From IMG/VR virus record IMGVR_UViG_3300046516_001816, positions 1 to 64,000 of that record: a DNA stretch of 64,000 nucleotides; one strand, given 5' to 3'. A program made the position numbers and the translations under genes. Under the pieces are notes generated by a model. It had not been told where the DNA came from and ran no database searches. It saw only the letters and a program-made list of their open reading frames with translations. Below are positions 54,918 through 58,144 of this stretch, one piece after another. Within the stretch, counting starts at the first letter, position 1. Each line of letters starts with the position of its first letter.

Positions 54918-55913
54918 ATGACGACTCATGAACGTGAGCGCGGTCGCGTGCGGTTGTATGCATGCGGTGGCGCTGGCATCAACATGGGCAGCAAGCTCGC
55001 GCACTTCAAGAACGAACCCAGCGAAGCTTACGCCCAGCTCGACACGGTTTACGTCGACACCTCTAAGTCCAACCTCCATGCGAAGATCGATGCGGAATCG
55101 ATCTATCTGATCGACGGCCTCGACGGCTCCGGTCAAGTGCGCAAGGAAAACTACGGCGCGATTTCCGAACGCGTGCGGGATATCCTGCAAACGTTCAAGC
55201 CCGTGGACCTGAACCTGATGCTGCATTCGCTCTCCGGCGGCAGCGGCTCCGTGATCGCCCCATCGATTGTCTCGGAACTGCTCTCGAAGGATCTGCCGAC
55301 CATCGTCATCTGCGTGGGTGACGACTCGACGAAGAAATTCGCCGAGAACACGCTCAATACGCTGAAGTCGTACGAGCAGATCGCGAAGCTGCGCAAGGCG
55401 CCGGTGTTGATGTACTATCTGCAAAACGGCCCCGACATGCCGCGTGCGAAGATCGACGAGCGGGTGCAGGCGCTGGTCGCCTCGCTATGCATGCTGTTCT
55501 CGCGTCGCAACCGTGAGCTCGACAGCAAAGACCTGTACAACTGGGTGAACTACCCGAATGTCACGTCGCATGCACCGGGCCTCACGGCACTCACGCTGGT
55601 TACGTCGCTCAACCCAGCTACGCTCGGCACGCTGGGCAACCTGATCTCGATCGCCACCCTCACCAAGGGTGATGTCGACCCGACGCTCTCGATTCGCCCC
55701 GAAGTGCAGTACGTGGGCTACGTCGACGATACGCTCGGCGGCGACTTCAAGGCGCCGTATCATTACGTTACCTCCGATGGTGTCTTCGGCGACGTCGCGG
55801 CGCACCTCAATGGCGTGCTGCGCGAACTCGACGACCAATCGGCAGCTCGCCTGAAAAAGGGCGGCATCAGCACCGGTGCGGACCAGGTCACTGATTCCGG
55901 CATGGTGTTGTAA
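54918..55913 (+). CDS. phuZ: Phage tubulin PhuZ
   Basis: Motifs ACGGAGIN, VDTS.SN, DGSG..R, tubulin signature SGGSGS, ELD..D, and C-terminal DSGMVL. Confidence 0.95.
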   Translation: MTTHERERGRVRLYACGGAGINMGSKLAHFKNEPSEAYAQLDTVYVDTSKSNLHAKIDAESIYLIDGLDGSGQVRKENYGAISERVRDILQTFKPVDLNLMLHSLSGGSGSVIAPSIVSELLSKDLPTIVICVGDDSTKKFAENTLNTLKSYEQIAKLRKAPVLMYYLQNGPDMPRAKIDERVQALVASLCMLFSRRNRELDSKDLYNWVNYPNVTSHAPGLTALTLVTSLNPATLGTLGNLISIATLTKGDVDPTLSIRPEVQYVGYVDDTLGGDFKAPYHYVTSDGVFGDVAAHLNGVLRELDDQSAARLKKGGISTGADQVTDSGMVL

Positions 55914-55917
55914 CTGG

Positions 55918-56505
55918 CTTAAGGACATCTTCAGGCTATGGGAGACCGTAGCCTGGAAAGTGTTCTTAGGTAACAAGGTTCTCTCGGAAAGGGCCGCAGC
56001 GTCGCGTCGTTGCGTACCCGTCTCTAGACCTGTCACGCGCCTAACCGTTGGGGATACCGCCGTAAAGAGGATACGGTATGGACCCCCAACTGACAGGCTT
56101 ACCGAGACATCCGAGAGCTACCTGTCAGTTCTTCCACCTACAACGAACAAATACAAGCCTGCTTCTTAGTGGGTTGATCATAGCGGTCTGACCAATGTCG
56201 AGACTTGAGTTCCGTTTACCGGGTTGATCGCCTGGACCGGTTCCGAATGAGGACAGAGGGTTACTGATACATGTCGGGGAGAAGACCAGTATAAGTCCGG
56301 AGTAGCTTCTGGGGATAGGTCTCGGTGTATCCGCATCGCGCGCGATCGTAAGGTCAGGAAGACCAAATCTATTTGCCAGCGTCCAGGATCGGGAAACCGA
56401 GGAGACGTTTGTGGCCCAACCATGCAATTGCGGCTGGTTTGGAATACCTACAAAACGGGGTAGGCATTCGAAAGCAGCTGCGGGTAGTAATGCGAGTGAG
56501 ACCAA
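55918..56505 (+). ncRNA. Candidate structured ncRNA or long UTR (region A)
   Basis: Many nested inverted repeats and no credible ORF. Confidence 0.55.
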
Positions 56506-56510
56506 TCATC

Positions 56511-56990
56511 ATGCATAAAAGACCTACCAAAATCATCGTCCTGCGACACGCAGAGAAACCGATCGATCCGATCGACCAGCGCTTAGCGCATCGCGGATAT
56601 AAACGGGCTGAGTACTTGGCGGAGTTCATTCCGAAGAACTTCGGGCGACCGAGCATGATCTTCGCGACCGAACCCACCAAGAGCAGCTTCCGACCGTTTC
56701 TGACGATGCAACCATTATGGGATGCAGTAAAAGAATCCTGGATGGATGTATCGATTGACGATGAGGCCGCTTTACACCTCGGGCACAAGTTGCGCGCAGG
56801 AGACCTCTCAGTTGGCGAAAACGTCGTCGTCTGCTGGCACCATGGCAAGATCCCGGAATTGATGAAGGGGCTCGGGTGCAGCGTGCACGACTACCCGGCG
56901 AAGTGGCCGGATAACGATTACAGCACCATCTACGTCGTGACCTATGAAAAGGGCGAGGCGGTGGTGTCCCAGTATAAACAGCTCTTCTAG
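56511..56990 (+). CDS. Histidine phosphatase superfamily protein (SixA/PGM-like)
   Basis: Motifs [30 protein letters not shown]. Confidence 0.85.
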
Positions 56991-56998
56991 GATTCGCA

Positions 56999-57241
56999 GT
57001 GGAAAACATCGAACAACAAGTCAAGCGCATCGTCGCTGCGCAACTCGGTCTGGAAGTGGCTGACATCAAGAACGACAGCCATATCACGCACGACCTCGGC
57101 GCGGACTCGCTCGACAAGATCGAACTCGTGATGGCGCTCGAAGACGATTTCAAGCTGGACATTCGCGACGAGGATGAAGAAAAGCTCCTCACCGTGCAGA
57201 ACATCATCGACTACGTGTCGGCCGAAAAGGCCAACGCGTAG
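56999..57241 (+). CDS. acpP: Acyl carrier protein
   Basis: 80 aa, acidic; phosphopantetheine motif [20 protein letters not shown]; TVQ..IDY. Confidence 0.95.
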
Positions 57242-57250
57242 CAGTCTTTT

Positions 57251-58144
57251 TCGGCGCGCGCCGGACGACTGGTAAGTGCGGGATACAGACCGCGCTCACC
57301 GGGGGCTCTCGTGATTCAATCAAGATCTTCTCCCGTTATAGGGACGTCCATCTTGGCGGGCGACGCGGCTTGCATACCCGCGTCGTAACCCGCGCGTGCG
57401 CGCGCCGACGGGTGAGCGTCAATCGGTGCAGTATCTAGATGTTGGTTTGTTTAGGTATTTCGGTTGACTCTTTGGAAAAGCGGCTCTTTGAAAAAGCGGT
57501 TTGGCTGACTTCGATCTCGGGCGTGGGAACCTGGGGTGGACGGGCACTCATTGACCGACTGGCGCTCACCGCTACTCGCCCTGCCTTTCGCAGGGCGCAT
57601 CTGGGCCCAATGTACACCAGCTCTTGTCGCTCGCCGCGGGCTTACATTTTTGGCGATTTGGATTCACCGCGGCTGGCGGGGGCAACAATAACGTACATTG
57701 AGGAAGATTGGCCACGACCCATTGGCCCCATCAACGCTACGGGCGCGAGAACGCGAAAGAGTACAGGTGTCAAAATGAAATAGGTTTAGCCCAGCGCACT
57801 TTTTCATGATCCCAAACCGCAAGGACTAACGGCACGCTTGGCGCCTGCCGGAAGCACGCGGGAGAGGGACGGCGATACCATTCCTATGAGTAATGGCTCT
57901 TTTTAAAGAGTCCGACGTACGAGACCCGTCCACGGGCATTACGGAGCCAAGCGGAGCTGCCTGCGCGATCTACGCATCGCCAATAGGAGTGACCGCCTAC
58001 CTGCTGTAAGCGTGAGTCTCACTGAAGTCGAGATAGGACCGCAACTGCTCAGCGTGGGAAATATAGAGCACACCCGGAAGGGCTTCCAGGATCGTGAGCG
58101 CGAGCCACGAAGCGAAGCCCTTCCCCCTTCTTTCTTTTATGCCG
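57251..58144 (+). ncRNA. Candidate large multi-domain structured ncRNA (region B, about 900 nt)
   Basis: At least four long-range closing helices; ends in a terminator + TTATGCCG; no credible ORF. Confidence 0.6.

What the first reader, a model, noticed from the sequence alone, without database searches (positions are those of the whole stretch)
55918..56505. About 590-nt structured region between phuZ and the His-phosphatase, with a built-in two-state switch
It opens with a long GAGA-capped hairpin (55918-970). A nested rod follows: CTCTCGGA 55981-88 / TCCGAGAG 56110-17; GTCTC / GAGAC; CCTGTCA 56029-35 / TGACAGG 56091-97; GTTGGGG / CCCCAAC; ATACCG / CGGTAT. The same TGACAGG arm can instead form a perfect 10-bp helix, AACTGACAGG 56088-97 / CCTGTCAGTT 56121-30, which excludes the first. 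A third domain (GGTCTC 56318-23 / GAGACC 56498-503; TATCCGCA / TGCGGGTA) closes 7 nt before the phosphatase ATG. Inference: a riboswitch-like leader or a processed ncRNA.
Basis: partly seen in the sequence, partly recalled or inferred. Interest (0 to 1): 0.75.

Follow-up and report, generated by a model that had tools for sequence, protein, structure and literature searches.

The report
New large structured RNA beside phuZ
The roughly 560-base gap after the tubulin gene phuZ of this jumbo phage holds a real, conserved, doubly pseudoknotted RNA.

Summary
In this one sequence they are no more frequent than chance; comparison with relatives decides which are real.

I found 15 distinct homologous copies, all directly 3' of phuZ in related jumbo phages. 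Some sit in Caballeronia and Paraburkholderia assemblies. Compensatory changes support one fold of about 520-600 nt on the + strand:
- a long hairpin P1;
- a 5' core (P2-P6) with two pseudoknots;
- hairpin P8;
- a long-range helix P9 around a variable middle;
- a 3' domain (P10-P14).

Paired cells are 89% and 86% in the two domains, against 29-51% in slid controls. Of 85 pairs, 52 have changes on both sides.

The competing CCTGTCA pairing exists only in this phage. The proposed closing helices of the third domain are not conserved either.

No Rfam family matches, and no tRNA or tmRNA is found. There is one copy per genome.

The first downstream gene varies, so this is not a phosphatase leader. 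An acyl carrier protein gene always follows, and two close relatives lack both the RNA and that gene.

Function is unknown. My best guess is a stand-alone folded ncRNA; a cis leader of the acyl carrier protein module is the main rival.

The parts
54918..55913 (+). phuZ (phage tubulin), upstream flank. Its stop codon ends 3 nt before P1.
   Evidence: PHROG 4733 E 2e-86 and Pfam Tubulin. 357 homologues.
55917..55971 (+). P1: long imperfect hairpin (about 25 bp, GAGA loop in the window) that opens the RNA.
   Evidence: Local fold z = -7.4 in the window. All 15 homologues fold into one long hairpin here with different sequences. Only the window copy has a T-rich tail.
55979..56139 (+). 5' core, nested helices P2-P6. 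P2 55981-88 / 56110-17. P3 hairpin 55991-56019. P4 56020-24 / 56104-08. P5 56047-53 / 56084-90. P6 56057-64 / 56072-81, with an invariant G-U pair and a bulged AU.
   Evidence: Model R1 scores 108-168 bits in 15 loci. Counted together with the two pseudoknots, 89.4% of cells pair against 29-48% when slid, and 34 of 50 pairs change on both sides.
56003..56039 (+). Pseudoknot PK1: the P3 loop CGCGU (56003-07) pairs with ACGCG (56035-39).
   Evidence: At least six different pairing sequences in relatives, such as GUGCA/UGCAC, GUCUG/CAGAC, GGUGUU/AACACC and CUGCC/GGCAG. Helix 3 has 4 of 5 pairs with changes on both sides.
56088..56130 (+). Pseudoknot P7: 56088-97 pairs with 56121-30. It spans the 3' strands of P4 and P2.
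   Evidence: An 8-11 bp duplex in 14 of the 15 homologues, each with a different sequence (z -3.0 to -6.1); L122 has a weaker interrupted duplex (z -1.7). Helix 8.
56029..56035 (+). It is an exact copy of part of the P7 3' strand.
   Evidence: Pairing with 56091-97 is significant only in the window (z -2.7). It is absent from 13 relatives, and L122 has an unrelated pairing. I judge it fortuitous.
56131..56155 (+). Conserved unpaired C/A-rich linker.
   Evidence: Conserved block in alignments A4 and A6. No pairing partner found.
56156..56175 (+). P8 hairpin (8 bp, 4-nt loop).
   Evidence: RNAalifold columns 301-320: 6 of 8 pairs have compensatory changes.
56176..56347 (+). P9 long-range helix (56176-86 with 56331-47) around a variable middle domain. 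The middle domain includes an insertion at about 56255-56325 that is present in only 4 of 15 sequences.
   Evidence: RNAalifold pairs 321-339 / 483-509. The same duplex geometry appears in all 15 with covarying extensions; the middle spans 88-206 nt.
56329..56503 (+). 3' domain. P10 hairpin 56352-64. P11 56375-83 / 56404-15, with the internal loop CAGGA (56384-88) opposite GGA (56401-03) and the P12 hairpin 56389-56400. P13 56416-21 / 56432-37. P14 56438-51 / 56460-73.
   Evidence: 83% nucleotide identity to L002, although the flanking proteins are only 54-58% identical. Model R2 scores 88-156 bits in 15 loci. 86% of cells pair against 34-51% when slid, and 18 of 35 pairs change on both sides.
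56474..56510 (+). Tail after P14, with a purine-rich stretch (GAGTGAGA) that looks like the ribosome-binding site of the next gene.
   Evidence: The core-to-start distance ranges from about 0-40 nt to 145-171 nt among homologues. No conserved terminator or sequestering helix.
56511..56990 (+). SixA-like histidine phosphatase, downstream flank.
   Evidence: AlphaFold pLDDT 93.7. Foldseek top hit SixA 2rfl, E 7e-8. 3 of 12 homologues hit PF00300.
56999..57241 (+). Acyl carrier protein gene (GTG start, 80 aa). It travels with the RNA.
   Evidence: PF00550 E 3.5e-11. Present downstream of the RNA in 15 of 15 loci. Absent from the two close relatives that lack the RNA.
58030..58139 (+). Second conserved structured element at the far end of the module. 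Stem 58076-86 / 58114-24 encloses CAGGA plus a hairpin and is followed by a T-rich run at 58125-39 (terminator-like).
   Evidence: 10 homologues; 10 of 19 predicted pairs have compensatory changes. Coordinates.

Best explanation
Shown: window 55917 to about 56475 (+ strand) encodes one large RNA with a single conserved fold. It belongs to a family that is not in Rfam and is confined, as far as I searched, to one clade of PhuZ-encoding jumbo phages linked to Burkholderiaceae. The fold consists of a long opening hairpin (P1), a 5' core with two pseudoknots, a hairpin (P8), a long-range helix (P9) that joins the two halves around a variable middle, and a four-helix 3' domain. There is one copy per genome. 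It is always the first element of an accessory module inserted between phuZ and the conserved backbone genes. That module always holds an acyl carrier protein gene and often a SixA-like phosphatase.

Inferred: P1 starts 3-7 nt after the phuZ stop codon with no conserved terminator, so the RNA is probably made as the continuation of the phuZ transcript. I think it most likely acts through its compact tertiary fold as a stand-alone RNA, that is, a scaffold for a protein, a self-assembling RNA or a ribozyme, and not by toggling between two secondary structures. The long P1 duplex is a plausible cutting site that would free it from the phuZ message. The actual function is not known.
For: - 15 distinct homologues, all directly 3' of phuZ.
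- The nucleotide sequence is more conserved than the flanking proteins.
- Covariation: 38 of 78 RNAalifold pairs. 5' core with both pseudoknots: 89.4% paired against 29-48% slid, 34 of 50 pairs compensatory. 3' domain: 86% against 34-51%, 18 of 35.
- P1, P7, PK1 and P9 recur in the homologues with different sequences.
- G-U pairs outnumber A-C pairs 74 to 34, which favours the + strand RNA.
- It is not coding. The spacing between conserved anchors falls in all three residue classes mod 3, and every + frame carries 2-13 stop codons.
- Single copy in the 285-kb genome.
- The first downstream gene varies, and the core-to-start distance ranges from about 0 to 171 nt.
- tRNA arrays lie in the same island in 3 relatives.
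- No Rfam family matches at the curated or at permissive thresholds, in the window or in 9 relatives.
Against: - There are no expression data. No RNA run was listed for this sequence, so the transcript ends, any processing and the RNA's stability are all inferred.
- The strict co-occurrence with the acyl carrier protein gene, the shared strand and a tail that in 9 of 15 runs into the next start codon fit a cis-regulatory leader equally well.
- The 15 sequences come from related phages, so pair counts overstate the number of independent events.
- The model-fitted alignments lean towards the model's structure.
- The pairing details of the middle domain and of P13 are less certain.
Confidence: 0.45

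Rival explanations
1. Cis-acting leader of the downstream module. The folded RNA senses a metabolite, a protein or a state of the acyl carrier protein, and controls translation or stability of the phosphatase and acyl carrier protein genes that follow it.
For: - Same strand as the genes that follow and directly upstream of them.
- An acyl carrier protein gene lies downstream in 15 of 15 RNA-bearing loci. The two nearest relatives without the RNA (L100, L108) also lack that gene but keep the phosphatase.
- In 9 of 15 the conserved tail ends within about 40 nt of the start codon.
- Pseudoknots and a kink-turn-like loop are common in riboswitches.
Against: - It is 3-5 times larger than known riboswitch aptamers.
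- I found no conserved terminator, anti-terminator or helix that hides the ribosome-binding site.
- The first downstream gene differs among relatives: phosphatase, acyl carrier protein or an unrelated 180-aa protein.
- In 5 relatives 145-171 nt of other sequence separate the core from the start codon.
- The RNA is not found next to 80 cellular homologues of the phosphatase.
Confidence: 0.3
2. 3' untranslated element of the phuZ message. The structure protects, processes or localises the phuZ mRNA.
For: - P1 begins 3-7 nt after the phuZ stop codon in every homologue.
- The element is always attached to phuZ.
- No promoter-like site lies between the two.
Against: - Close relatives (L100, L108) and all more distant PhuZ phages, except possibly L111, keep phuZ without it.
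- A stabiliser would not need two pseudoknots and about 14 helices.
- Its presence tracks the acyl carrier protein gene, not phuZ.
Confidence: 0.1
3. One reading: a riboswitch-like two-state switch in which TGACAGG 56091-97 alternates between CCTGTCA 56029-35 and CCTGTCAGTT 56121-30.
For: Both pairings are exact and mutually exclusive in the window. The competing duplex is stronger than in shuffles in the window (-12.0 kcal/mol, z -2.7).
Against: - The competing arm has no counterpart in 13 of 14 relatives, whereas the 10-bp helix covaries in 14 of the 15 sequences.
- The 10-bp helix is compatible with the rod as a pseudoknot.
- About 10 exact 7-mer complements are expected by chance in this sequence.
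Confidence: 0.04
4. A DNA-level element (replication origin, packaging site or protein-binding array) or a degraded gene, rather than an RNA.
For: It is a long non-coding gap in a compact genome and contains four GATC sites.
Against: - Compensatory changes preserve helices, including two pseudoknots, which a duplex DNA site does not need.
- G-U pairs exceed A-C pairs 74 to 34.
- There is no GC-skew turning point at this position.
- There is no conserved reading frame.
Confidence: 0.03

Closest known systems
GOLLD and ROOL (large 'ornate' RNAs of phages and prophages; Rfam RF01998, RF03087)
   Same: Same size class (about 500-800 nt). Many helices with pseudoknots. Carried by phages. Function unknown. 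Often near tRNA genes, and here tRNA arrays lie in the same island in 3 of 15 relatives. The general properties of GOLLD and ROOL are from my own knowledge and from the abstract of bioRxiv 10.1101/2024.12.08.627333.
   Different: No match to either model, even at E <= 10. The hosts differ: jumbo phages linked to Burkholderiaceae. The position is fixed after phuZ and before an acyl carrier protein gene. Nothing here tests whether it self-assembles.
Riboswitches and T-box leaders
   Same: Structured RNA upstream of, and on the same strand as, a gene it always accompanies. It has pseudoknots and a kink-turn-like internal loop.
   Different: Several times larger. No conserved expression platform. 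The only candidate alternative pairing is not conserved. The first downstream gene varies. No Rfam riboswitch or T-box match.
Group I self-splicing introns of phages
   Same: A phage-borne RNA of a few hundred nucleotides with a pseudoknotted core.
   Different: It lies between two complete genes. PhuZ ends at its normal C-terminus in all homologues, and the next gene starts with its own ATG, so there are no exons to join. No match to the Rfam intron models. The order of helices does not follow the P3-P7 pseudoknot plan (my own reading).
RNase III processing hairpins between cistrons of phage T7 early mRNA
   Same: P1 is a long imperfect duplex (about 20-30 bp) placed between two functional units of one probable transcript. 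The T7 comparison is from my own knowledge.
   Different: Cleavage is untested. P1 is part of a much larger conserved fold.
Non-coding RNAs reported for phage phiKZ
   Same: A PhuZ-encoding jumbo phage that expresses ncRNAs. [quoted passage not shown]
   Different: The cultured-phage collection has no sequence like this RNA. The more distant PhuZ loci I scanned with models R1 and R2 lack it.

Membership tests
Any Rfam 15 family (4227 models) | Score at or above the family's curated gathering threshold | tested here: not met
   No matches in the 64-kb window. At E <= 10 the region gives only one chance-level hit, ZFAT-AS1_1 at 13 bits. In 9 relatives only tRNAs pass, and none of those lies in the homologous region.
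Riboswitch | Conserved ligand-binding fold supported by covariation | tested here: inconclusive
   A conserved fold is strongly supported, but nothing shows that it binds a ligand.
Riboswitch | Conserved expression platform: mutually exclusive helices, a terminator or a helix that hides the ribosome-binding site | tested here: not met
   The competing helix is specific to the window. There is no conserved terminator. The tail and its distance to the start codon are variable.
Riboswitch | Consistently upstream of genes of one pathway | tested here: inconclusive
   An acyl carrier protein gene is always within about 1.9 kb downstream, but the first gene varies. The RNA is absent next to 80 phosphatase homologues.
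Riboswitch | Ligand-dependent structural change | not testable with these tools
   Needs in-line probing or a similar assay.
Group I intron | Interrupts a gene whose exons join into one product | tested here: not met
   It lies between a complete phuZ and a complete downstream gene.
Group I intron | Match to the intron covariance model | tested here: not met
   No hit at E <= 10.
GOLLD / ROOL | Match to the family covariance models | tested here: not met
   No hit at E <= 10.
GOLLD / ROOL | Homo-oligomeric assembly | not testable with these tools
   Needs native gels or cryo-EM.
tRNA / tmRNA / tRNA-like | Cloverleaf or tRNA-like domain | tested here: not met
   ARAGORN finds none in the window.
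Kink-turn motif (P11/P12 junction) | Helix, 3-nt bulge, tandem G-A / A-G pairs (CAG-GA opposite G-GA) | tested here: inconclusive
   CAGGA is present in 15 of 15. The opposite strand reads GGA in about 10 of 15 and GGC or GGU in the others. This was read by eye, with no 3D test.
Intrinsic terminator (P1) | G+C-rich hairpin followed by a U run, conserved among homologues | tested here: not met
   Flagged in the window only. The homologous hairpins have no U tail.
Protein-coding gene | Conserved open frame, with insertions and deletions in multiples of three | tested here: not met
   The P2 strand spacing is 128-157 nt and falls in all three residue classes mod 3. Each + frame has 2-13 stop codons.

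The most novel reading that the evidence does not exclude
This is a new class of large, complex-folded RNA specific to PhuZ-encoding jumbo phages, comparable in intricacy to ribozymes or to the self-assembling GOLLD and ROOL RNAs. Its activity (catalysis, assembly, or scaffolding of a phage protein) would be functionally tied to the phage's own acyl carrier protein module. A second, smaller structured element that shares the CAGGA-hairpin junction would close the same transcription unit.
Probability: 0.35. Interest if true: 0.85.

Novelty: new variant of a known kind. Interest (0 to 1): 0.7.

Why it matters
Large RNAs with many conserved helices and pseudoknots are rare, and in the past they have turned out to be ribozymes, ribonucleoprotein cores or self-assembling cages. 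Non-coding RNAs of jumbo phages are almost unstudied. A 2026 review gives them a single sentence.

This RNA comes with enough sequence diversity to build a model. It has a fixed genomic address next to phuZ and a strict partnership with a phage acyl carrier protein gene. Relatives also sit in the genome assemblies of cultured strains (Caballeronia arationis LMG 29324 and Paraburkholderia sp. BCC1886), so it can be tested directly.

The case also shows that attractive alternative pairings read from a single sequence can be chance.

Tried and rejected
- **Rfam.** Searched at curated and permissive thresholds on the window and on 9 relatives. Nothing relevant.
- **tRNA / tmRNA.** None in the window.
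- **RNA-seq evidence.** No RNA run was listed; one soil DNA run holds 6% of the words.
- **Cultured phages and plasmids.** No similar DNA.
- **Short exact-word scans of viral contigs.** Two 17-mer hits and seven degenerate-motif hits were chance matches, with no PhuZ nearby and no score from the model.
- **151 genomes sampled from the family of the Paraburkholderia adhaesiva genome.** No match, but this scan had no positive control.
- **Metagenome scan with the phosphatase.** 80 distant homologues, none with the RNA.
- **Replication origin.** No skew signal.
- **Coding.** Rejected.
- **RNAalifold's long-range helix, columns 103-107 / 553-557.** Rejected in favour of the local P12 hairpin, which covaries.
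- **A second possible switch in the 3' domain.** I considered the upstream CCNAAYC competing with the P14 3' strand for GGUUUGG. Covariation instead places CCNAAYC with GGCNGG, as P13.
- **11-nt tetraloop receptor.** CCUAAR and GUAUGG are both conserved, but they sit about 7 bp apart in the supported fold, and the GAAA loop of P12 is not conserved.
- **The CAGGA-hairpin junction as a repeated genomic motif.** Only one strict instance in the genome.

Full report
**Setting.** The window is the first 64 kb of a 284,983-bp viral record that is rated complete. ORF 54918-55913 is PhuZ (PHROG 4733, E 2e-86; Pfam Tubulin). The next gene starts at 56511. That leaves 597 nt with no credible gene.

**The flanking genes.** The downstream 159-aa protein has no Pfam hit of its own. 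Three of 12 homologues hit His_Phos_1. An 80-aa acyl carrier protein gene follows at 56999-57241 (PF00550, E 3.5e-11).

**Check of the observation.** Taken alone they are not remarkable. The gap holds 14 exact complementary 7-mer pairs, and dinucleotide shuffles give 10.5 +/- 4.0. The folding energy is low on both strands, with z = -4.1 on + and -3.0 on -. Rfam gives nothing, and ARAGORN finds no tRNA or tmRNA.

**Relatives.**
- A syntenic IMG/VR contig (L002) shares 83% nucleotide identity over window 56330-56508. Its PhuZ and phosphatase are only 58% and 55% identical.
- A PhuZ protein search found many relatives at 55-75% identity.
- Fetching their contigs and scanning viral and genome collections gave 15 distinct copies of the element. 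Each starts right after the phuZ stop codon.
- Some copies lie in assemblies of Caballeronia arationis LMG 29324 and Paraburkholderia sp. BCC1886. This points to Burkholderiaceae hosts.
- Cultured-phage and plasmid collections hold nothing similar.

**The conserved fold.**
- RNAalifold on nine sequences predicted 78 pairs, 38 of them with compensatory changes.
- I built two covariance models and realigned all copies: R1 for the 5' core (window 55979-56139) and R2 for the 3' domain (56329-56503).
- For the 5' core, with both pseudoknots written in, 89.4% of cells form standard pairs, against 29-48% when the 3' partners are slid by 1-3 columns. 34 of 50 pairs change on both sides, and no shuffle out of 500 reaches any measure.
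- For the 3' domain the figures are 86.0% against 34-51%, with 18 of 35 pairs.
- Examples: the window's CTCTCGGA/TCCGAGAG corresponds to ACTCGTC/GACGAGT in most relatives and to ACGCGTC/GACGCGT in L112. GTCTC/GAGAC corresponds to GTCCC/GGGAC.
- P6 keeps an invariant G-U pair and a bulged AU, while its inner four pairs vary.
- P1 is a single long hairpin in all 15, with unrelated sequences.
- P8 covaries.
- P9 is a long-range helix (GAUC with GAUC, then GCG-type with CGC-type strands plus covarying extensions). It encloses a variable middle of 88-206 nt and ties the two halves into one molecule.
- G-U pairs outnumber A-C pairs 74 to 34, as expected for an RNA read from the + strand.
- The spacing between conserved anchors differs by amounts that are not multiples of three, and all + frames carry stop codons. 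It is not a gene for a protein.

**The proposed switch.** The 10-bp helix 56088-97 / 56121-30 recurs as an 8-11 bp duplex in 14 of the 15 copies, each time with a different sequence (z from -3.0 to -6.1). L122 has a weaker interrupted duplex (z -1.7). Its 3' strand lies beyond the 3' strands of P4 and P2. It is therefore a pseudoknot that coexists with the rod, not a replacement for it.

The competing pairing of 56029-35 with 56091-97 is stronger than shuffles only in the window (z -2.7). One relative, L122, has an unrelated pairing, and the other 13 have nothing.

In the supported fold, the stretch just after 56029-35 (56035-39) pairs with the P3 loop (56003-07). This second pseudoknot shows at least six different complementary sequence pairs among relatives.

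With about ten chance 7-mer complements expected per sequence, one fortuitous competitor is unsurprising.

GGTCTC 56318 lies in an insertion shared by only four copies. GAGACC belongs to a purine-rich tail next to the start codon. TATCCGCA/TGCGGGTA has no equivalent in relatives.

**Genomic context.**
- The RNA is single copy in its genome.
- Two close relatives, L100 (from Paraburkholderia adhaesiva) and L108, lack it. More distant PhuZ phages lack it too, except for a partial, divergent copy in L111 that keeps P2, P3 and P6.
- Every RNA-bearing locus has an acyl carrier protein gene downstream. L100 and L108 have neither the RNA nor that gene, but they keep the phosphatase.
- The first gene after the RNA is the phosphatase in nine copies, the acyl carrier protein in five and another protein in one.
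- The distance from the conserved core to the start codon ranges from about 0 to 171 nt.
- None of 80 metagenomic homologues of the phosphatase has the RNA nearby.
- The backbone DUF7484 - phuZ - [module] - p124 - p218 is shared by all. The RNA therefore heads an accessory module.
- At the far end of that module lies a second conserved structure (window about 58030-58139). It has the same CAGGA-plus-hairpin junction and a T-rich tail.
- In three relatives, tRNA arrays follow this second element.

**Interpretation.** The existence, strand, extent and main architecture of the RNA are well supported. Its function is not known.

The intricate fold, the variable downstream neighbour, the lack of any conserved expression platform and the company of other RNA genes lead me to favour a stand-alone folded RNA (0.45). 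It is probably transcribed with phuZ and possibly released at P1. A cis leader of the acyl carrier protein module is a serious rival (0.3) because of the strict co-occurrence.

I found no description of such an RNA in the searched literature. No expression data could be obtained.

Noticed in passing
window 56999-57241 (+): An 80-aa acyl carrier protein gene with a GTG start (PF00550, E 3.5e-11) sits in what looked like a gap after the phosphatase gene. It is present downstream of the RNA in all 15 related loci.
   Followed up: yes
window 58030-58139 (+): A second conserved structured element. Stem 58076-86 / 58114-24 encloses CAGGA plus a hairpin, the same junction as in the 3' domain of the main RNA. 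A T-rich run follows at 58125-39, like a terminator. It is conserved in 10 relatives, with compensatory changes in 10 of 19 pairs. In L002 it ends 2 nt before a tRNA array.
   Followed up: partly
window 57242-58030 (+): The 114-aa ORF at 57439-57783 has no homologue in any relative and is probably not a gene. Short nucleotide islands at 57497-57557 and 57702-57738 are conserved in several relatives. Their nature is unknown.
   Followed up: no
L002:6642-7779, L112:7715-7991, L124:6657-6930: tRNA gene arrays (8, at least 3, and 3 genes) lie in the same island downstream of the RNA and the acyl carrier protein gene in three relatives. The window's own genome has its four tRNAs far away, at 215.7-216.8 kb.
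   Followed up: partly
L098, L099, L100 (genome contigs): Related jumbo-phage genomes of 144-286 kb occur as contigs in assemblies of Caballeronia arationis LMG 29324, Paraburkholderia sp. BCC1886 and Paraburkholderia adhaesiva ZD32-2. This suggests Burkholderiaceae hosts and offers cultured material.
   Followed up: partly
L111:4640-4840: A phage whose PhuZ is only 42% identical has, about 180-340 nt after phuZ, a divergent stretch. It keeps a P2-like helix (CACTCGTAGTA / TACTATGAGTG), a P3-like hairpin and the P6 motif. The family may be wider than the 15 clear members.
   Followed up: partly
window 56040-56045 and 56076-56081: CCUAA(R) and GUAUGG are conserved in nearly all copies and are identical to the two strands of the classic 11-nt GNRA-tetraloop receptor. 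In the supported fold they are about 7 bp apart, at the base and top of P5, so the canonical receptor cannot form as drawn.
   Followed up: partly
window 56255-56325: An insertion of about 70 nt in the middle domain is shared only with L086, L112 and L125. It contains AAGUCCGG, a string that recalls the conserved region I of RNase P RNA, but no RNase P model matches.
   Followed up: no
window 56176-56347: Three conserved GAUC-containing elements (the P9 5' strand, the loop of a middle-domain hairpin, and the P9 3' strand) are mutually complementary palindromes. Which two pair, or whether the loop makes an intermolecular contact, cannot be decided from invariant sequence.
   Followed up: no
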